From IMG/VR virus record IMGVR_UViG_3300044568_003163, positions 124,001-188,000 of that record: a stretch of DNA of 64,000 bases. One strand, written 5' to 3'. Made by a program: the position numbers and the translations under genes. Every line of letters starts with the position of its first letter. The stretch's first letter is position 1. The notes under the pieces are model-generated. The model made no database searches and was not told where the DNA came from. It was given only the letters and a program-made list of their open reading frames with translations. Shown here piece by piece: positions 28,410 to 39,852 of the stretch.

Positions 28410-28763
28410 TTACTCAGCTGAATCAGTAAACCATTCTTTAACGATAGCTTCTGCTTCGCTAAGTTCGATGCCTTTCAATTTGATTTGCATCTTTAAAGAG
28501 TGCAATTCAGCAACCCATTTAGTAGCATCGAAGTTTTTTGCACCTGGTCTCAAAGAGTCAGATGTTTCTGGAGCCATATCAACTAAGTTGTTGATTTTGA
28601 ATTCCAAATTCAATTTTTCCTTTTTCAATTTGTCAACTAATCCACTAGCTTCTAAAGATGCTAATTGTGACAGGTTTGACGCTCTTGTTTCTTTGATTGT
28701 TGAATCCGAAGCACTCAAGTTTTGAGTAAATTTGTTTCCTTTTAATTCTGGTGATTTTCCCAT
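28410..28763 (-). CDS. coiled-coil hypothetical protein
   Basis: ORF after a class II promoter. Confidence 0.75.
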   Translation of the reverse strand: MGKSPELKGNKFTQNLSASDSTIKETRASNLSQLASLEASGLVDKLKKEKLNLEFKINNLVDMAPETSDSLRPGAKNFDATKWVAELHSLKMQIKLKGIELSEAEAIVKEWFTDSAE

Positions 28764-28841: not shown

Positions 28842-29399
28842 TTAATAATTAACTTCAACTCCTAAGAAGAAGCTTAAATCTGAAGGACTTGGCTTCATAT
28901 GGATTGATTGTTCCGGAAAGTGCCATACTTTGCCTTTTGAATCCGTAATGTCAAATTTGCCATTTACATAATCCACAATTTCATCAACGGTAAATTCTTT
29001 AATGGTTTGACGATATTGGTCAACTACTAAAATTCCTCGAAAAGTTTCGTGCATTTTTAAAATACCACCTTCGGAATTTAGTAAGTCAAGCGTTTCTAAT
29101 TTTTTACTTTGCATATTTTGTGTTTTTAATGGGTTGCTTAGAATTACTCTAAGTTTTTCGTTTAATTGACTATTCAGTTCTCCGGATATATCATGAGCAT
29201 CTCGATCACCACTCATCCATCTACTATCAAACATCTCATCATACAACCAAATTAATTTTCGGCAATTACATCCTTGCTGAACTGTTTTGCAGGCTTCAAT
29301 ATTTCTACTGATCCAAAGGCCGATGTCTCTTTTATTTAAAGCAACATGTGGCTTGACATTACTCTGGTTTTCCAATTTGTCTGTAGATTTTTTCAACAT
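28842..29399 (-). CDS. hypothetical protein
   Basis: ORF packing. Confidence 0.65.
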   Translation of the reverse strand: MLKKSTDKLENQSNVKPHVALNKRDIGLWISRNIEACKTVQQGCNCRKLIWLYDEMFDSRWMSGDRDAHDISGELNSQLNEKLRVILSNPLKTQNMQSKKLETLDLLNSEGGILKMHETFRGILVVDQYRQTIKEFTVDEIVDYVNGKFDITDSKGKVWHFPEQSIHMKPSPSDLSFFLGVEVNY

Positions 29400-30234
29400 A
29401 ATTTTTGTCTTGAGTTAGTATTGGCATTTCGTTATCAATAATCCATTTAGAACGATAATAGAATTCATAAGGTGTCTCTCCTGTAACCTGGTCCATATAC
29501 ATATGTTCACGACCTTCAGGAATTTGTACTCCAAATGATTTTTCGCCTTTCTTTTTATAGAAGGTATCTCTCGTTTTAATGATAGCAGCACCTCTTTTAA
29601 ATCGAGTAGGAAAGTCATTCCAATTAACACCTTTGTCCATCATCAGATCTTGCATTTTGTCACACTTAACTCCATGAAGTTGAGATGTTGAAAACATAGA
29701 TTGAGCTGCCATAGAAACTGAGTTTCTAGTTGCATCTTGTTGTCTCCAAATAAAGTAATTAACTACCTCATCGATATGAGGTATTACAAATACTCTCGCA
29801 TCGAATGTTGCAAGTGGAATTTGTTCAATGTCTTCAGTATCAAGAAGTACTTTTGAAGTAGCTCTCATAGTTCTTAGTTGATTGAATTTTGCAGTTGCAA
29901 GTGAAGCTGCAATTGAGCACATTTTCTGTAGATTGTAATCAAACCATGCAGATGTGTCTTTAGTATCATAATCAGTCAACCAGATTGAAATCTCATCGGA
30001 TTGAACATAACCCATCTTAGCACCTTGAATGTTTTCACATAGGTACTTAGTGGTTTCATTCATATCATCAAGAAGTCCTTGGTCATATGGCTTATTAAGT
30101 CCACGAGTGTATGTATGAAATGCTTTTCCATCAATACGAATCAGTATGTTGTTTCTACGAGTTAGATATGTTCTAGTCCTATCTTCATAGAAGGACTTCA
30201 TTCTATCTCCTAGTGAGTCTTTTGATTTTTTCAT
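29359..30234 (-). CDS. thg1: tRNA(His) guanylyltransferase Thg1-like protein
   Basis: RIDGKAFHT, YVQSDEIS, FDARV, WRQQDATRNS, NWND...KRG. Confidence 0.92.
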   Translation of the reverse strand: MKKSKDSLGDRMKSFYEDRTRTYLTRRNNILIRIDGKAFHTYTRGLNKPYDQGLLDDMNETTKYLCENIQGAKMGYVQSDEISIWLTDYDTKDTSAWFDYNLQKMCSIAASLATAKFNQLRTMRATSKVLLDTEDIEQIPLATFDARVFVIPHIDEVVNYFIWRQQDATRNSVSMAAQSMFSTSQLHGVKCDKMQDLMMDKGVNWNDFPTRFKRGAAIIKTRDTFYKKKGEKSFGVQIPEGREHMYMDQVTGETPYEFYYRSKWIIDNEMPILTQDKNYVEKIYRQIGKPE

Positions 30235-33530: not shown

Positions 33531-33596
33531 TTTGATATGTAAAAGTAATCAATCTAGACGACAATGTGAAATGAATTTGTATAAAGTTATTAACAA
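33531..33596 (-). promoter_or_regulatory. class I promoter variant (TACTTTTA)
   Basis: box at conserved spacing. Confidence 0.65.
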
Positions 33597-34120
33597 AATT
33601 CAATTATCTCATAATCATCTAGACTGAGTCTAGGTTCAGCAATTTCTGGTTCATGAAACTTTAAACATTCGTGAATGTACTTTGAATGGTCAATCCATTT
33701 TTCGTTTGCATAACCTAATGTAAGGTGAAAGCTGAAATATGGAATTCTACTAGTTCCGCAAATTTCACGTATAGATTCAGCATCCGGTGACCATACTCGT
33801 AACCACCAGTGTTCACCGTTGGTTCTTGGTGAAGGGTCTATATAAAATACTATTTCTTTTTTATCAAACAACTTAGCGCCTTCGTCAAAATTAGGAGTTT
33901 CCCTTTCCGAATCATTAATGAAAGTAACGTGAGAACCTCTGATAGGTTTGTTTAATTCTAAGTTGAATCGCTTTTTAATAAACCATGCATAATAGTTGTG
34001 CAGCTCGTCATTAGTCAAAATGACAGCTACTCGTTTCCAAGAAGCTTGTGCGTTGTGCTTCTTTGTTTTATTAGGAGGCTGGAATTCCATCACTCCTTTG
34101 ACCTTTATTAACTTACTCAT
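33590..34120 (-). CDS. 2H phosphoesterase-like protein
   Basis: two HxT motifs: SHVTF and FHLTL. Confidence 0.65.
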   Translation of the reverse strand: MSKLIKVKGVMEFQPPNKTKKHNAQASWKRVAVILTNDELHNYYAWFIKKRFNLELNKPIRGSHVTFINDSERETPNFDEGAKLFDKKEIVFYIDPSPRTNGEHWWLRVWSPDAESIREICGTSRIPYFSFHLTLGYANEKWIDHSKYIHECLKFHEPEIAEPRLSLDDYEIIEFC

Positions 34121-36056: not shown

Positions 36057-36419
36057 TTATGTGAAAATTACTGCATATAAACCTACAGCTATACTTGCAC
36101 CGATGATTCCTCCATAGGTACCAAAATTAATATCTTCTTCACTCCATGGTGCTTTATATTTAGCTCCATAATACCACTCACGAACCCAGTTTACTGCTTT
36201 AGCACCGAATCCACCAACAAATACTTGAAATAATATTGGAGTGTCTGCTAAATGCATAAAATTTAACATTAGCAATATACAAGGAATAGTTAGAACTAGT
36301 GAATATAAGAAATGCTTGTGATAATTTTGTTTAATGAAATCTTTCGTTAAAAAGAATTTCATGTCAGTAAAGAATTTAATGATTCCATCTCTTAACATTG
36401 GCCAAATTGTTATTTCCAT
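36057..36419 (-). CDS. membrane protein
   Basis: HKHF...E...D pattern with three TM segments. Confidence 0.7.
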   Translation of the reverse strand: MEITIWPMLRDGIIKFFTDMKFFLTKDFIKQNYHKHFLYSLVLTIPCILLMLNFMHLADTPILFQVFVGGFGAKAVNWVREWYYGAKYKAPWSEEDINFGTYGGIIGASIAVGLYAVIFT

Positions 36420-36514
36420 AATATTTAATTTTTTTAAAGCACCTAAATTAATTAGATTTGCTTTAATTATCTATCTAAATATGGATATAATTCAAATAAC
36501 AAATTCACATTTAT

Positions 36515-36543
36515 AAAAAAGAGGACTCTTTCGAATCCTCTTT
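36515..36543 (-). terminator. intrinsic terminator of the Ro-like gene
   Basis: GAGGATTC-GAAA-GAGTCCTC-TTTTTT. Confidence 0.85.
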
Positions 36544-36565
36544 AAATAGCAATCATTATATTTGA

Positions 36566-38002
36566 TTACTGAATAACACTGTATCTCTCAGTATCAATAG
36601 CTTTAAGCATAATACTCATAGGACTCATAGAATCTCCACTAAGCACTGCTTTAAGAATTGACGGTGAAAATCCACTGATTAAAGCGGTACCATTCTCAGT
36701 TGCTCTAACTGGAACGTTGTCGTGTCGAGAAACTAAGTTCCAAAACACAATCTTTGGCATTGCATAGCCAGAATCAGAGTATTTTCTTTCGATCATACTG
36801 ATAGCATTGTCACTTATACGTGACGCTTGGTTGAATTCCATGTCAGACATAATCAATAGACATGTTGGCATTTGGTCAATCGAAACGTTATGTTTGATTG
36901 CTTGTTCAAGAATCATATCGAAGGTAGCTTCTAGATTCGTTGACATACCCCATTGAGCACGTTCTAATTGTTGCATTCTCGAACGTAAATCTCCTGTTAG
37001 GTACTCTAACTTTGGTCTTTCGCTGAAAGTTACAAATGCATCTTTGAAGGGACCTTCATTTCTTTCAGAAATATAAAGACCTAATGAGATACAAACGTCT
37101 AGTGCAGAAACTGAACCAGAAACAGTTGTAGACATTGAACCAGAAACATCACAGATAGGTAAAACCATTTCTTTAGATCCTTCCATAAAGTTAGGAAGAG
37201 CTTTCCATTGCTCGTTTGATAACGTAGTGTCACCGTAAGACATTGTTTTTGTAACGTCATATGGATATACGGCACCTGCATTAACTTTAGTTTCACCTTT
37301 AACTAGTGACTCTTTGTAAGCCTCGAATGCTTCGGCATCATTTTTACCAAAAGCTTTTGAGTATCTCGCCATTGCAACAGAAGGTATATGAGCATAGTTA
37401 ACATTACCAAAGTCTTTGTTACATAAGTTAGTTTCAATAACGTTAGTTAAAGAAACAATCTTAGTTCTAAATTCTTTAGGTGATAAGCCCATTTTGGTTC
37501 TGATTTTGTTAGCAATAGCCTTTTTATCAGCCGATACTTTACCACCAGTTCGAGGAATCCATTTTGCAAGTAATCCATTACCTTCTTCAAGATTATGAAT
37601 AACTGTAGCAATTGCAGCATCTTCTACCGCAGTTCCGAATGTTACGAATATGTCATCCCATCTACCGAACTCGGCAATCAAATGAATGTTTTCAATAACT
37701 TCGTTAGGATAAACCTCAGAAGCATGACGTAAAAGTACTCGGAAAGCTTCACGTTCTCCTGCTCCACCTCTAACGTCTCTTCCCCAATACATCAATTTTC
37801 TTGTGATTAAAGGATTCTCATTATGTGCAGCTTCAAACTTAGCTATCAAACGTGATTTACCTTCATCGGTTTTCATTTGAGCTCTTACCGCTCCCATCAC
37901 GAAAAATAAATCTACACAAGCATTAAGAGAAGTGGTAGATGTTACCATTCCATTTTCAGTAGTTGTGTTTTTAGTACGCATTGCATCAACAAAAGTTGTC
38001 AT
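36566..38002 (-). CDS. DUF2828-family Ro60/TROVE-like protein with C-terminal vWA domain
   Basis: TENG, RDVRGGAGER, GRWDD, AKWIPR; MIDAS DVSGSM...STN...SDMEF; FWNL. Confidence 0.85.
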   Translation of the reverse strand: MTTFVDAMRTKNTTTENGMVTSTTSLNACVDLFFVMGAVRAQMKTDEGKSRLIAKFEAAHNENPLITRKLMYWGRDVRGGAGEREAFRVLLRHASEVYPNEVIENIHLIAEFGRWDDIFVTFGTAVEDAAIATVIHNLEEGNGLLAKWIPRTGGKVSADKKAIANKIRTKMGLSPKEFRTKIVSLTNVIETNLCNKDFGNVNYAHIPSVAMARYSKAFGKNDAEAFEAYKESLVKGETKVNAGAVYPYDVTKTMSYGDTTLSNEQWKALPNFMEGSKEMVLPICDVSGSMSTTVSGSVSALDVCISLGLYISERNEGPFKDAFVTFSERPKLEYLTGDLRSRMQQLERAQWGMSTNLEATFDMILEQAIKHNVSIDQMPTCLLIMSDMEFNQASRISDNAISMIERKYSDSGYAMPKIVFWNLVSRHDNVPVRATENGTALISGFSPSILKAVLSGDSMSPMSIMLKAIDTERYSVIQ

Positions 38003-38032
38003 AGTTTTTGGTTTTAAATATGTTAAAAAATT

Positions 38033-38094
38033 CAGAGTGATATATCGGTTTCAAATTAAAAGTTTGATGATAAAAGTTGCTGAAATCACTCTTT
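38033..38094 (-). ncRNA. stem-loop RNA 3 (Y-RNA-like candidate, Lys anticodon-arm mimic)
   Basis: AGAGTGAT/ATCACTCT stem, TTCAGCAA, inner TCAAA-CTTTTAA-TTTGA. Confidence 0.65.
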
Positions 38095-38116
38095 GTATTG
38101 TTTAAAAAAAAATTAT

Positions 38117-38169
38117 CAGGGTACGGTTGGTTTTCAATTGCTGAATGTTAATTGCTGAATGTACCCTTT
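38117..38169 (-). ncRNA. stem-loop RNA 2 (Y-RNA-like candidate)
   Basis: AGGGTAC/GTACCCT stem, two ATTCAGCAATT copies. Confidence 0.65.
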
Positions 38170-38183
38170 GTAATTATAATCGA

Positions 38184-38376
38184 CAGATTGGCTGTTTAGA
38201 TTTTGTGAAGCATCTAGAAACTTCCTCAGTAGTTTTGAAGTGGGATTTGATACCACCAGTCGCTTTGTTTTAAAGTGATGACTAAACTCACTTAATCAAC
38301 CGGCTTTTGAATTTCACGATTGATTTCGTTAATGGTTATCTGTAGATAAGTTGTTTGTTTGCTGAACCCAATCTTT
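38184..38376 (-). ncRNA. stem-loop RNA 1 (long Y-RNA-like candidate)
   Basis: AGATTGG/CCAATCT stem, TTCAGCAA, several inner hairpins including T-arm-like GTGG-TATCAAATC-CCAC. Confidence 0.6.
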
Positions 38377-38415
38377 GATATATTGTAAGAACGTATGTCG
38401 TTGTAACTAGAATTA

Positions 38416-38443
38416 TTATATGTGAGCTAATTTATTTAGTTTC
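38416..38443 (-). promoter_or_regulatory. class II promoter GAAACT-N15-CATATAA driving the RNA array and Ro-like gene
   Basis: exact match to the repeated motif. Confidence 0.7.
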
Positions 38444-38445
38444 AA

Positions 38446-38844
38446 TTAAATTTTAATTTTTTCTAAAAATTTATAAACTCCTTTATCATAATTGAATAAG
38501 ATAAACCATTTTGATTTGTTCCATTTGCCAGTTCTAATACTTGCAAGAGATTTTTGAACGTAAGGTGCACTTGAACTTTGAACGTTATAAGCTTTTACTT
38601 CTACAAAATCTCCGTTTTCATCAATCAAATCATGATATCGAGAATCAGAAAGTTGAAAGTTGTAATTTTCGGTAAGCCAAAGTTCTAATGTTTTGCCTTG
38701 CTTAACAGTACCTTTAATTTCCTCCAGACTTCGGCTCCTTCTTGTATAAGGAGAATCGAAAAGCGCTTGGGATTCGGATTCGATGAGCCTTTCCAATAAT
38801 AATTTGTCCTTTATGTCCGATTCGGTAAATTGTGCGTTTTCCAT
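38446..38844 (-). CDS. PD-(D/E)xK-like nuclease-fold protein
   Basis: GKTLE...HDL...VEVKAY. Confidence 0.55.
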   Translation of the reverse strand: MENAQFTESDIKDKLLLERLIESESQALFDSPYTRRSRSLEEIKGTVKQGKTLELWLTENYNFQLSDSRYHDLIDENGDFVEVKAYNVQSSSAPYVQKSLASIRTGKWNKSKWFILFNYDKGVYKFLEKIKI

Positions 38845-38986: not shown

Positions 38987-39407
38987 TGATTAGTGATTGT
39001 AAATATTTTATACGGTCGTTAACTGCTTCTTTATATTGTTCTGATGCAAATGCAGATAGCTCGCTTATTGCTAATTTGATAGCCAGCTCACTGTACTTAG
39101 CTTGAACTTCTCCTATGGTGATGTTAGTTTTCCAATCACATACTTCACAAATCTCATCTACCCATTCTGAATAATCATGTTGGATTCTTTCTCTAACATT
39201 CATTGGCTCAACATCAATCCAAGGTTTAATCCAACAAAAAGGAATGTTGATTCTCATTTCATCTAATCCTAGACCAAATAAGACATCATAAACATCTTTA
39301 GTAAGTACATCTATTATGATGCCTTCTGTGCCTCTTAGTACATTTTGGTAATCCGAGTCACATATAACTCTATCTCCCTTTTTGTATACTTTTGATATAT
39401 CGGTCAT
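38970..39407 (-). CDS. hypothetical protein, SH3-like N-terminus
   Basis: KKGDRV...GTEGII. Confidence 0.7.
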   Translation of the reverse strand: MTDISKVYKKGDRVICDSDYQNVLRGTEGIIIDVLTKDVYDVLFGLGLDEMRINIPFCWIKPWIDVEPMNVRERIQHDYSEWVDEICEVCDWKTNITIGEVQAKYSELAIKLAISELSAFASEQYKEAVNDRIKYLQSLINEPTQ

Positions 39408-39822
39408 AATCTTTTAATGTTTGGTTGATTCTTTCTCTGCCTGCAGGATTCATCGAGTGAACGATGCATTCTGGTAATGCGATTCCATTATCAATACAGA
39501 ATTGAACAAACCATCTTGCAGATTCATTTCCTGTATCTTCTTTAAATTGAGTTGCCTTAACATTATAATTGTCAATTCCATGATACATTGATGGGTCGTA
39601 ATGCTCATCGGCTAAATCGTGATCGAATGAAACTAATTCTGGAAATTGACCGTTGGCAAATCTTTCAGCTACTTCGATAACGAATGCTGAATGAGACCTA
39701 ACAGTTATCCATTCCCGAGTTCCGTATCGAGCCTCTCTCATGTAATTAGTACAGTCAGTTGGTACTCTAATATCGTCTAAAAATAGACTGTAAGTTTTGA
39801 AGTTTATAATGTGATTTCTCAT
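39370..39822 (-). CDS. cyclic-phosphate-processing receiver-like domain protein
   Basis: LFLDDIRVP, VSFDHDL, TG, VHSMNPAG. Confidence 0.8.
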   Translation of the reverse strand: MRNHIINFKTYSLFLDDIRVPTDCTNYMREARYGTREWITVRSHSAFVIEVAERFANGQFPELVSFDHDLADEHYDPSMYHGIDNYNVKATQFKEDTGNESARWFVQFCIDNGIALPECIVHSMNPAGRERINQTLKDYDRYIKSIQKGR

Positions 39823-39852
39823 AATTGTTATATGCAATAAAGGTGTTTTTGA

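What the first reader, a model, noticed from the sequence alone, without database searches (positions are those of the whole stretch)
36515..38443. Self-contained unit: array of three covarying UUCAGCAA stem-loop RNAs plus a Ro60/TROVE-like vWA protein
Seen on the minus strand: promoter, three elements, DUF2828/vWA gene, strong terminator. Each element reads CAAAG-stem-TTCAGCAA-variable insert-stem-CTG. The stems differ in sequence yet pair perfectly (AGATTGG/CCAATCT, AGGGTAC/GTACCCT, AGAGTGAT/ATCACTCT), which is within-genome covariation. Lengths are about 193, 53 and 62 nt, with A/U-rich spacers. Known: Ro60/Rsr proteins bind adjacently encoded Y RNAs through a terminal stem, and bacterial Y RNAs carry tRNA-like domains. 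Inference: a Ro-like RNP family with its own RNA class, where a constant protein-binding handle carries variable payloads processed from one transcript. I cannot confirm it is undescribed.
Basis: partly seen in the sequence, partly recalled or inferred. Interest (0 to 1): 0.9.

Follow-up and report, generated by a model that had tools for sequence, protein, structure and literature searches.

The report
Ro-like protein with partner RNAs
A lake-water phage transcribes a Ro60-shaped RNA-binding protein together with three small structured RNAs of a widespread, apparently undescribed family; their stem-plus-CAGCAA handle matches the Class I RNAs of social amoebae, which suggests an old protein-RNA partnership tied to tRNA biology.

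Summary
On the minus strand, 38445..36515 is one unit: a promoter-like site, three elements (38374..38184, 38167..38117, 38092..38033), a 478-aa DUF2828+DUF7788 gene (38002..36566) and a strong terminator.

A covariance model built only from other genomes finds exactly these three elements in the 64-kb window (E 2e-9 to 1e-4). The AlphaFold model (pLDDT 89.6) matches full-length Ro60/Rsr structures.

The RNA family recurs next to homologous genes in about half of roughly 100 viral and bacterial loci. It is always on the gene strand, and the terminal stem is 98% paired with compensatory changes at all 7 pairs. It also occurs in cultured phages (E. coli wV8, Listeria LMTA-94).

The variable part is often an anticodon-arm mimic (loop CUNNNAA) or a nested tRNA-like domain, and the genes often sit in tRNA arrays. 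Metatranscriptome contigs cover the unit but not its flanks.

No Rfam family reaches its threshold. The only consistent sub-threshold match is Dictyostelium Class I RNA, which shares the AAG start, terminal stem, (CC)UUACAGCAA motif and CUG(U) end. Dictyostelids encode orthologues of the protein (33% identity).

Verdict: a Y-RNA-like RNP with a new RNA handle. Binding, processing and function are inferred, not shown.

The parts
38415..38445 (-). Promoter-like site: TTGAAA (38445..38440), 19-nt spacer, TATAAT (38420..38415)
   Evidence: Read. Conserved in the 71%-identity relative L130 (TTGAAACT...ACATATAA). RNA contigs of two runs end at 38392/38393, just downstream. Not called by the consensus scan because of the 19-nt spacer.
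38184..38374 (-). Element E1, 191 nt. P1 is AGAUUGG (38374..38368) with CCAAUCU (38191..38185). Motif UUCAGCAA at 38366..38359, a large insert, then G at 38184.
   Evidence: the MFE structure closes P1. R3 matches the 5' part, 28.3 bits, E 1.3e-4. The orthologue in L130 2222..2376 keeps P1 and an inner hairpin with a compensatory change. Covered by RNA contigs.
38117..38167 (-). Element E2, 51 nt. P1 is AGGGUAC (38167..38161) with GUACCCU (38124..38118). Motif UUCAGCAA at 38159..38152, with a second copy at 38145..38138 inside the small hairpin UUCA-GCAAU-UGAA, followed by AACC.
   Evidence: R3 36.0 bits, E 1.3e-6. Full-length match to Rfam RF01414 (Dictyostelium Class I RNA), 24.7 bits, E 0.028, below its gathering score of 41.5.
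38033..38092 (-). Element E3, 60 nt. P1 is AGAGUGAU (38092..38085) with AUCACUCU (38041..38034). Motif UUCAGCAA at 38084..38077.
   Evidence: R3 46.9 bits, E 1.8e-9.
38051..38067 (-). P2 of E3: a 5-bp stem UCAAA/UUUGA with the 7-nt loop CUUUUAA. This is the anticodon-loop signature C32 U33 NNN A37 A38 with 'anticodon' UUU.
   Evidence: In the family, 27 seven-nt P2 loops give C 18/27, U 22/27, NNN, A 24/27, A 25/27. P2 is 80% paired, with compensatory changes at 5 of 5 pairs.
36566..38002 (-). Gene for a 478-aa Ro60-fold protein: an N-terminal helical ring (DUF2828) and a C-terminal vWA domain (DUF7788) with MIDAS-type residues D285-x-S287-x-S289, T355 and D387.
   Evidence: AlphaFold pLDDT 89.6, pTM 0.90. 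Foldseek matches to Ro60/Rsr. PHROG 850 'RNA-binding protein', 1.2e-141. MIDAS residues read.
36515..36543 (-). Intrinsic terminator: stem AAAGAGGAUUC/GAGUCCUCUUU, GAAA loop, U run
   Evidence: -15.2 kcal/mol, z -4.6, 0 of 200 shuffles as stable. RNA contig depth falls to 0 in the flank beyond it (36300..36542).

Best explanation
This is a Ro60-like ribonucleoprotein module.

Transcription: one promoter drives a transcript that carries three small RNAs and then the mRNA of a ring-plus-vWA protein of the DUF2828/DUF7788 family.

RNA anatomy: each RNA has a constant handle and a variable payload. The handle is a 7-8 bp stem that joins its 5' and 3' ends (closing pairs A-U and G-C), followed directly by single-stranded UUCAGCAA on the 5' side. 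On the 3' side an A-rich stretch precedes the stem and ...CUG ends it.

Inferred steps:
- The A/U-rich spacers are cut to release discrete RNAs.
- The protein binds the handle, as Ro60/Rsr binds the terminal stem of Y RNAs.
- The payload, an anticodon-arm look-alike (E3: CUUUUAA, the tRNA-Lys(UUU) loop type) or in relatives a whole tRNA-like domain, connects the particle to tRNA-handling enzymes or to tRNA-targeting nucleases.

Most likely role: tRNA surveillance or repair, or protection against anticodon nucleases, during infection. The RNA would act either as a tether or gate for the ring (as Y RNA does for Rsr and PNPase) or as a protein-stabilised decoy.

Shown: the fold, the RNA family and its covariation, its linkage to the gene and strand, the tRNA-like payloads, the tRNA and RNA-repair neighbourhood, and transcription.
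Inferred: binding, processing and biological role.

The confidence of 0.7 is for the RNP partnership. The specific biological role is about 0.3.
For: Protein:
- Pfam DUF7788 and DUF2828.
- Confident AlphaFold model whose 11 best PDB matches are full-length Ro60, Rsr and phage Ro60.
- MIDAS-type residues present.

RNA family:
- A strict pattern scan gives 50 hits on the gene strand against 3 on the other, and 0-3 in shuffles.
- cmsearch R1 gives 65 and 67 hits at E <= 1, with 131 of 132 on the gene strand.
- R2 gives 80 hits at E <= 0.01, all on the gene strand, in 45 of 100 sources. 64 lie upstream (median 218 nt) and 16 just downstream.
- Covariation: P1 98% paired with 7 of 7 pairs compensatory; P2 80% with 5 of 5. 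The score is 0.643 against 0.17 in shuffles (0 of 500 reach it) and at most 0.097 when the partners are slid.
- The independent model R3 finds exactly the window's three elements.

Payload:
- CUNNNAA loops.
- tRNA model hits nested inside elements: L013 2398-2468 (50 bits), L012 2670-2733, L032 2530-2593, L016 955-1015.
- A YrlA-like hit overlapping element L046 4582-4701 (42.6 bits).

Context:
- 48 of 123 loci carry tRNA genes within 3 kb; 261 of 263 are on the gene strand.
- wV8 elements lie between tRNA genes, and Listeria phage LMTA-94 has RtcB 1.3 kb downstream.
- The window has cREC_REC (9e-13), conserved upstream in relatives, and a Thg1-like gene.

Expression:
- One 1786-nt RNA contig spans 36606..38392.
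- The RNA part is 2-5 times deeper than the CDS in two runs.
- The flanks are near zero.
Against: - No binding data exist. Adjacency does not prove partnership.
- The protein does not match Pfam TROVE, and no PDB sequence is detectable. The Ro60 link rests on a predicted fold with TM about 0.6 and rmsd 7-8 A.
- The canonical Ro-binding motifs GGUCCGA and GNCGAAN0-1G are absent, so the mode of recognition cannot be transferred from Ro60.
- About half of the loci show no element at E <= 0.01. Some of those contigs are truncated.
- The expression evidence comes from assembler contigs of a 95-99% identical strain. They carry no strand information and no read ends, so discrete processed RNAs are not shown and DNA carry-over is not formally excluded.
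- Folding energies are not exceptional.
- The window itself has no tRNA gene, and E1's insert matches no tRNA model.
- The overlap between the 'anticodon' preference (UGU, GUU, UUU) and the targets of the PARIS nuclease AriB rests on 27 related loops.
Confidence: 0.7

Rival explanations
1. The elements are cis-acting leader structures. They would act as autoregulatory operators, attenuators or mRNA stabilisers that control expression of the downstream gene, and would not be free-standing RNAs.
For: In the window and in most loci they lie between the promoter and the gene, on the same transcript. Autoregulation through an RNA mimic of the natural ligand is common for RNA-binding proteins (established knowledge).
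Against: - 16 of 80 matches lie downstream of the gene.
- In wV8 they are interspersed with tRNA genes 300-900 nt after the stop codon.
- Some lie 2 kb away (L016, L023).
- Copy number varies from 1 to 5.
- Some contain a complete tRNA-like domain.
- The RNA segment is 2-5 times more abundant than the CDS in two runs.
- The closest known RNAs (Class I, Y RNAs) act in trans.
Confidence: 0.1
2. The RNAs and the protein are independent passengers of phage tRNA islands. Some other factor would read the handle, for example a processing RNase or an RRM protein such as Rnp1A in Dictyostelium. The RNAs would then work alone, for example as anticodon-arm decoys for tRNA-cleaving defence nucleases.
For: - Strong association with tRNA arrays.
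- P2 loops mimic anticodon loops, and their commonest 'anticodons' UGU, GUU and UUU are the tRNAs cut by PARIS AriB.
- The only protein shown to bind a Class I RNA directly is the RRM protein Rnp1A (PMC7919456).
- In Dictyostelids the protein gene and the Class I genes are unlinked.
Against: - The window and its close relatives have the elements and the gene but no tRNA genes.
- The elements were found by searching around the protein gene, and they sit within about 200 nt of it on its strand in very distant lineages.
- The protein has the fold of a protein whose known job is to bind such stem-closed RNAs.
Confidence: 0.15
3. The resemblance among the three elements is a chance or repeat artefact, for example AT-rich direct repeats or a DNA-level motif such as a phage promoter or protein-binding site, with no RNA structure.
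For: The region is AT-rich. Folding energies of the elements are not far from shuffled controls.
Against: - An independent covariance model picks exactly these three sites out of 128 kb of searched strand.
- The stems differ in sequence but pair in 98% of cells across 80 sequences, with compensatory changes at every pair.
- Strand specificity is strict: 131 of 132 hits.
- The family is conserved from Chloroflexota MAGs to E. coli and Listeria phages.
Confidence: 0.02

Closest known systems
Ro60/Rsr with Y RNAs (bacterial YrlA/Yrn1, Rfam RF02553; Chen et al. 2014, PMC4201824)
   Same: - A ring-plus-vWA protein encoded next to one or more small RNAs on the same strand.
- Each RNA is closed by a stem of its 5' and 3' ends that carries the presumed protein site.
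- A second module mimics tRNA.
- Occurrence in phages.
- Neighbourhood of RNA-repair genes (RtcB).
- Fold match. A sub-threshold YrlA hit overlaps a relative's element.
   Different: - The protein belongs to another sequence family (DUF2828/DUF7788). It has no Pfam TROVE hit and no detectable PDB sequence relative.
- The handle is stem + UUCAGCAA, not GGUCCGA or GNCGAAN0-1G.
- Many payloads are only an anticodon-arm mimic, not a T/D-arm mimic.
- The window gives no YrlA hit.
- Chen et al. searched only TROVE-annotated genomes.
Dictyostelium Class I RNAs (Rfam RF01414; Kjellin et al. 2021, PMC7919456)
   Same: - Start (A)AG.
- A 6-8 bp stem joining the two ends, conserved in structure but not in sequence.
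- The conserved motif directly 3' of the 5' strand: CCUUACAGCAA against (N)UU(C/A)CAGCAA here. The exact 11-mer occurs in three bacterial elements.
- AAA-rich sequence after the motif.
- A small hairpin followed by GAAAACC before the 3' strand (E2, E3).
- End CUG(U).
- Length about 50-65 nt.
- RF01414 is the only family that repeatedly matches the elements full-length (23-28 bits, 6 elements, no match elsewhere).
- Dictyostelids encode the same protein family.
   Different: - All scores are below Rfam's gathering score of 41.5.
- Class I RNAs are eukaryotic and are expressed from about 30-40 dispersed genes with a DUSE promoter.
- They are reported as unique to Dictyostelia, and their only known direct binder is the RRM protein Rnp1A.
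- They are not linked to the DUF2828 gene.
- Here there are 1-5 copies next to the gene, and the payload can reach about 190 nt.
Phage tRNA genes and tRNA variants that counter tRNA-cleaving defences (for example T5 tRNAs against PARIS AriB; PMC12409363, PMC11464382)
   Same: Same genomic islands. The anticodon-loop signature CUNNNAA, with the commonest 'anticodons' UGU, GUU and UUU, equals the AriB target set.
   Different: The elements are not tRNAs. Most have only an anticodon-arm-like hairpin held in a foreign handle, and they cannot be aminoacylated. No decoy activity has been tested.

Membership tests
DUF2828/DUF7788 protein family (Pfam PF11443 + PF25043; PHROG 850) | Scores above the curated Pfam cut-offs for both domains, in that order | tested here: met
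   DUF7788 180.1 bits (cut-off 27.1) and DUF2828 93 bits (cut-off 29). PHROG 850, 1.2e-141 over residues 1-475.
Ro60/TROVE (Rsr) proteins | Sequence match to the TROVE domain (Pfam PF05731) or to a solved Ro60 | tested here: not met
   No TROVE hit at E <= 0.1. A profile search of PDB sequences finds no Ro60. UniRef does label some eukaryotic members 'TROVE domain-containing'.
Ro60/TROVE (Rsr) proteins | Fold: a helical-repeat ring followed by a vWA domain with a MIDAS motif | tested here: met
   Model pLDDT 89.6. The top 11 Foldseek hits are full-length Ro60/Rsr/phage Ro60, E 2.8e-8 to 4.7e-6, TM 0.45-0.62. DxSxS...T...D is present. The model is predicted, not solved.
Ro60/TROVE (Rsr) proteins | Binds Y RNA through the conserved helix motif (GGUCCGA in animals, GNCGAAN0-1G in bacteria) | tested here: not met
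   Neither motif occurs in 38003..38450 (-). Binding itself cannot be tested here.
Bacterial Y RNA (YrlA, RF02553) | Match to the covariance model; tRNA-like T/D-arm domain | tested here: not met
   No YrlA hit in the window, even at E <= 10. Relatives give sub-threshold hits only (L046 42.6 and 47.1 bits, L079 34.6; gathering score 69).
Bacterial Y RNA (functional class) | Small RNA(s) encoded within a few kb of the Ro-like gene on the same strand, closed by a 5'/3' stem | tested here: met
Dictyostelium Class I RNA (RF01414) | Score at or above Rfam's gathering score (41.5 bits) | tested here: not met
   E2 24.7 bits. Relatives 23.1-28.1 bits. All are full-length alignments, all coincide with elements, and none lies elsewhere.
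Dictyostelium Class I RNA (RF01414) | Short terminal stem of the 5' and 3' ends, conserved in structure but not sequence | tested here: met
Dictyostelium Class I RNA (RF01414) | The 11-nt motif CCUUACAGCAA next to the 5' strand of the stem | tested here: inconclusive
   The window has (G/A/U)UUCAGCAA, which shares CAGCAA and the UU but lacks the A. In the family, 16 of 80 have UUACAGCAA and 3 have the exact 11-mer. Dictyostelid sequences themselves vary at these positions.
Dictyostelium Class I RNA (RF01414) | Mature ends AAG... and ...CUGU | not testable with these tools
   The genomic sequence fits: AAAG in 31 of 80, CUG with G in 80 of 80. RNA ends cannot be read from contigs.
Dictyostelium Class I RNA (RF01414) | DUSE promoter about 60 nt upstream; dispersed multi-gene family in Dictyostelia | tested here: not met
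   This is a phage locus with a bacterial-type promoter and tandem copies on one transcript.

The most novel reading that the evidence does not exclude
The Class I RNAs of dictyostelid social amoebae are eukaryotic members of this RNA family. They are so far reported as unique to that group and have no established function. Their invariant stem plus CCUUACAGCAA motif would be the docking site of the DUF2828/DUF7788 Ro-like protein, which Dictyostelids encode as a vertically inherited, intronless gene.

The pair would then be an ancient RNP, a third TROVE-type particle beside Ro-Y RNA and TEP1-vault RNA. It would be shared by phages, bacteria and eukaryotes, and other eukaryotes with the protein (other Amoebozoa, Naegleria, chytrids, oomycetes) should carry unrecognised partner RNAs.
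Probability: 0.5. Interest if true: 0.9.

Novelty: new variant of a known kind. Interest (0 to 1): 0.82.

Why it matters
Four reasons.

1. It gives a testable function to a very large family of unknown function. The family has 6541 clusters at 50% identity, occurs in 710 deposited phage genomes including Felix O1-like, KVP40-like, Listeria P100-like and mycobacteriophages, and is present in many eukaryotes. It also gives the family a defined RNA ligand.

2. It adds a second, sequence-distinct handle to the Ro/Y-RNA principle. The payloads are anticodon-arm and tRNA mimics that sit in phage tRNA islands beside RNA-repair genes. This bears directly on the current question of how phages cope with tRNA-cleaving defences.

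3. It offers a concrete candidate partner and an evolutionary origin for Dictyostelium Class I RNAs. Their molecular role has been open since 2004, and they were thought to be lineage-specific.

4. Cultured, genetically tractable phage-host pairs carry the module (E. coli, M. smegmatis), so the key experiments are easy.

Tried and rejected
- **Rfam at gathering thresholds on the window:** nothing.
- **Megablast of the locus against GenBank phages:** nothing.
- **ARAGORN on the window:** no tRNA.
- **Profile search of PDB sequences:** no Ro60. Only the fold search showed it.
- **Consensus promoter/terminator scan:** missed both sites, for technical reasons.
- **Thermodynamic stability as evidence:** weak, so not used.
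- **My first strict scan:** missed E1 and E2 because it treated CUG as lying outside the stem. Fixed.
- **Short closure of E1 proposed by the model (38378..38312):** rejected, because the relative L130 conserves the distal closure.
- **Peptide and keyword search for a Dictyostelid DUF2828 in the Kjellin supplements:** only an unrelated vWA protein.
- **Picking AT-rich representatives:** gave a Rhizamoeba protein, which then led to the Dictyostelid orthologues.
- **Class I-like RNA within 10 kb of the D. purpureum and A. subglobosum genes:** none, with either R2 or Rfam.
- **Avesson et al. 2011, the pull-down of Class I RNA partners:** the paper is not held.
- **Literature searches for DUF2828, DUF7788, the motif, and TROVE with Dictyostelium:** no description of this RNA.
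- **Not done:** I did not type Dictyostelid RNA sequences into a model, to avoid long typed input. The reciprocal test therefore rests on Rfam's own RF01414 model.
Full report
**1. What is in the window**

The window is part of IMGVR_UViG_3300044568_003163, a 294-kb viral contig from lake water. On the minus strand I read, in order:
- a promoter-like site: TTGAAA at 38445..38440, 19 nt, TATAAT at 38420..38415;
- three elements: E1 38374..38184 (191 nt), E2 38167..38117 (51 nt), E3 38092..38033 (60 nt);
- a 478-aa ORF, 38002..36566;
- a hairpin terminator, 36543..36515, at -15.2 kcal/mol, z -4.6.

Each element reads (C)AAAG-stem-(N)UUCAGCAA...stem-CUG. The AG and the CU are the two outer base pairs of a 7-8 bp stem.

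TTCAGCAA occurs 12 times in the window against 4.3 expected, and four copies lie in this 290-nt stretch. Folding energies alone are unremarkable, so the case rests on comparison between genomes.

**2. The protein**

Pfam gives DUF7788 (4.9e-53) and DUF2828 (2.4e-26) but not TROVE. PHROG 850 calls the family 'RNA-binding protein'.

An AlphaFold model built from 48 homologues is confident (pLDDT 89.6, pTM 0.90). Its 11 best PDB matches are all full-length Ro60, Rsr or phage Ro60 (E 2.8e-8 to 4.7e-6, TM up to 0.62). Isolated vWA domains follow only at E > 4e-3. The vWA part keeps MIDAS-type residues. Sequence-only comparison with the PDB shows nothing.

The protein therefore has the Ro60 architecture but belongs to a separate sequence family. 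That family is very large: 6541 clusters at 50% identity. It occurs in 710 deposited phage genomes, where some records already carry the label 'Ro-like RNA binding protein', and in bacteria and eukaryotes.

**3. The RNA family**

A pattern scan of 43 viral loci holding homologues looked for AG + stem + at most 5 nt + CAGCAA ... stem + CUG. It gave 50 hits on the gene strand, 3 on the other strand, and 0-3 in shuffles.

Covariance-model searches:
- R1, built from 14 short elements, gave 65 matches at E <= 1 in the window plus 42 viral loci, 64 of them on the gene strand.
- R1 gave 67 matches, all on the gene strand, in 80 further loci from bacterial and archaeal assemblies: Chloroflexota, Clostridia, cyanobacteria, Rickettsiales and others, mostly MAGs and probably often prophages or binned phage contigs.
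- R2, which adds a second helix, gave 80 matches at E <= 0.01 in 45 of 100 sources, all on the gene strand. 64 lie upstream (median 218 nt) and 16 just downstream. There are 1-5 copies per locus.

On these 80 sequences the terminal stem P1 is paired in 98% of cells, with compensatory changes at all 7 pairs. The inner hairpin P2 is 80% paired, with 5 of 5 pairs compensatory. The covariation score is 0.643, against 0.17 in shuffles (0 of 500 reach it) and at most 0.097 when the partners are slid.

Consensus: (A/U)AAG, stem, N-U-(U/A)-C100-A94-G100-C99-A100-A94, a/c-n-UAAAA, a variable part, an A-rich run, stem, C-U89-G100.

R1 and R2 contained the window's E2 and E3. I therefore built R3 from 34 elements of other genomes only. 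With filters off it finds exactly E3, E2 and E1 as the three best hits in the window (E 1.8e-9, 1.3e-6, 1.3e-4; next 0.07).

A relative with 71% protein identity (L130) has the same layout. Its E1 orthologue keeps P1, and an inner hairpin changes from GAAGU/GCUUC to GUAGU/ACUAC around a conserved loop.

The family is also present in cultured phages:
- three copies between tRNA genes downstream of gene 47 of E. coli phage wV8 (Felix O1-like);
- two copies upstream of the gene in Listeria phage LMTA-94;
- a weak copy after the gene in mycobacteriophage Calm.

**4. The payload and the neighbourhood**

In about a third of the elements P2 is a 4-5 bp stem with a 7-nt loop. The loop composition is C (18/27), U (22/27), NNN, A (24/27), A (25/27), which is the anticodon-loop signature. 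The window's E3 has CUUUUAA.

Longer elements enclose sequences that match the tRNA model:
- L013 2398-2468, 50 bits, anticodon UCA;
- L012 2670-2733;
- L032 2530-2593;
- L016 955-1015.

One element (L046 4582-4701) overlaps a YrlA-like match of 42.6 bits.

Context:
- 48 of 123 loci have tRNA genes within 3 kb, and 261 of 263 are on the gene strand.
- Listeria phage LMTA-94 has RtcB close by.
- The window has a cyclic-phosphate-processing receiver-domain gene (cREC_REC, 9e-13) two to three genes upstream, conserved in relatives. It also has a Thg1-like gene 6 kb away.

The commonest 'anticodons' (UGU x6, GUU x3, UUU x3) are the three tRNAs that the PARIS nuclease AriB cleaves (PMC12409363). 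With 27 related loops this is a lead, not a result.

**5. Expression**

Four lake metatranscriptomes hold a 95-99% identical strain.
- In one run, a single 1786-nt contig covers 36606..38392.
- Contigs of two runs end at 38392/38393, just downstream of the -10 box.
- The RNA segment has depth 18.3 against 3.5-3.9 on the CDS in one run, and 8.0 against 2.1-3.6 in another.
- The flank 36300..36542 is at zero in all four runs. The flank 38406..38700 is zero in three runs and at most 2.2 in X16.

This fits a discrete, transcribed unit in which the RNA part is more abundant than the mRNA. The data are contigs without strand or read ends, so processing into discrete RNAs is not shown.

**6. Comparison with what is known**

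*Ro60/Rsr and Y RNAs.* The logic matches: a ring-vWA protein, adjacent same-strand RNAs closed by a terminal stem, tRNA-like modules, and links to phages and RNA repair (PMC4201824). The protein family, the handle motif (no GGUCCGA or GNCGAAN0-1G) and the frequent anticodon-arm payload differ. Chen et al. searched only TROVE-annotated genomes.

*Rfam.* No Rfam 15 family reaches its threshold, and I found no paper describing the motif.

*Dictyostelium Class I RNA.* The one family that keeps appearing below threshold is RF01414. The matches are full-length:
- E2, 24.7 bits, E 0.028 in a 600-nt search of all 4227 families;
- L038 24.8 bits and L012 23.1 bits;
- L066 28.1, L063 26.7 and L058 25.9 bits.

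Every match falls on an element defined independently, and none falls elsewhere in about 190 kb searched.

Kjellin et al. define Class I RNAs by these features:
- a start at AAG;
- a short terminal stem conserved in structure only;
- an 11-nt motif (CCUUACAGCAA) beside the 5' strand;
- a variable remainder;
- an end at CUGU;
- a length of about 60 nt.

Their sequence lists also show 'GAAAACC' before the 3' strand, as in E2 and E3. In my set, 16 of 80 elements have UUACAGCAA and three have the exact 11-mer.

Those authors report the class as unique to Dictyostelia, with only the RRM protein Rnp1A known to bind it directly.

*The Dictyostelid protein.* Dictyostelids do encode DUF2828+DUF7788 proteins: A. 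subglobosum, P. violaceum, D. purpureum, D. dimigraforme and D. firmibasis.
- The D. purpureum protein is 33% identical to the phage protein over its full length (E 7e-73).
- The genes are intronless and lie in ordinary nuclear contexts.
- They form a clade that follows the species tree and groups loosely (support 85/91, below the tree's significance mark) with other Amoebozoa, apart from the phage/bacterial clade.
- No Class I-like RNA lies within 10 kb of them.
- Physarum has the protein but no reported Class I RNA.

I therefore do not file the elements as members of RF01414, because the gathering score, the promoter type and the taxon are not met. I do rate a shared RNA-protein recognition code, and probably common ancestry, at about even odds.

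**7. Verdict**

This is a Ro60-like RNP module with its own RNA class. A constant stem + UUCAGCAA handle carries variable payloads that are often tRNA-like, co-transcribed with the protein.

Binding, processing and function are inferred. The most likely role lies in tRNA surveillance or repair, or in countering tRNA-targeting defence.

I rate it a new variant of a known kind, with an unusually interesting possible extension to the Class I RNAs of social amoebae.

Noticed in passing
L066 1007-1068: Rfam RF02979 'freshwater-1 RNA' matches above its gathering score (82.7 bits, gathering score 72). It sits inside the same array of tRNAs and CAGCAA elements upstream of a DUF2828 gene. This orphan motif may belong to the same RNA-island context.
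   Followed up: no
L013 1343-1417 and 2398-2469; L032 1484-1558; L049 4394-4468: Suppressor-type tRNAs lie beside the elements (anticodon CUA), and one (anticodon UCA) lies nested inside an element. This hints that some of these phages recode stop codons, and that such tRNAs can be carried inside the handle.
   Followed up: partly
window 39370-39837 (-), 29359-30234 (-), 33590-34120 (-): Neighbouring genes point to RNA-end repair: cREC_REC (cyclic-phosphate-processing receiver domain, 9e-13), a Thg1-like 3'-5' nucleotidyltransferase (1.6e-28), and a weak 2H phosphoesterase hit. cREC is conserved 2-3 genes upstream of the DUF2828 gene in three relatives.
   Followed up: partly
window 1-64000: ARAGORN finds no tRNA gene in the 64-kb window, although 39% of related loci sit in tRNA arrays (up to 26 tRNAs within 7 kb).
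   Followed up: yes
window 38138-38145 (-): E2 carries a second UUCAGCAA inside its variable part. It forms the small hairpin UUCA-GCAAU-UGAA followed by AACC, the arrangement seen in many Dictyostelid Class I RNAs.
   Followed up: no
L046 4595-4709 and 4937-5038; L079 2401-2689: Sub-threshold matches to the bacterial Y RNA model YrlA (31.8-47.1 bits, gathering score 69) lie next to DUF2828 genes. One overlaps a CAGCAA element, which suggests chimeras of the new handle with a YrlA-type tRNA-like domain.
   Followed up: no
window 28494-28549 (+): A weak match to the element model (17.9 bits, E 0.07) with AAAGAGUGCAAUUCAGCAAC lies on the opposite strand to the local genes and inside ORFs. It is probably chance.
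   Followed up: no
L066 796-904; L079 2470-2633: tRNA-model matches of 109 and 164 nt in these arrays are much longer than a tRNA. They may be intron-containing or composite tRNA-like genes.
   Followed up: no
L128 10001-11509; L129 10001-11512: The Dictyostelid DUF2828 genes are single-exon genes, flanked by ordinary eukaryotic genes (Slu7, tubulin, cyclin).
   Followed up: yes
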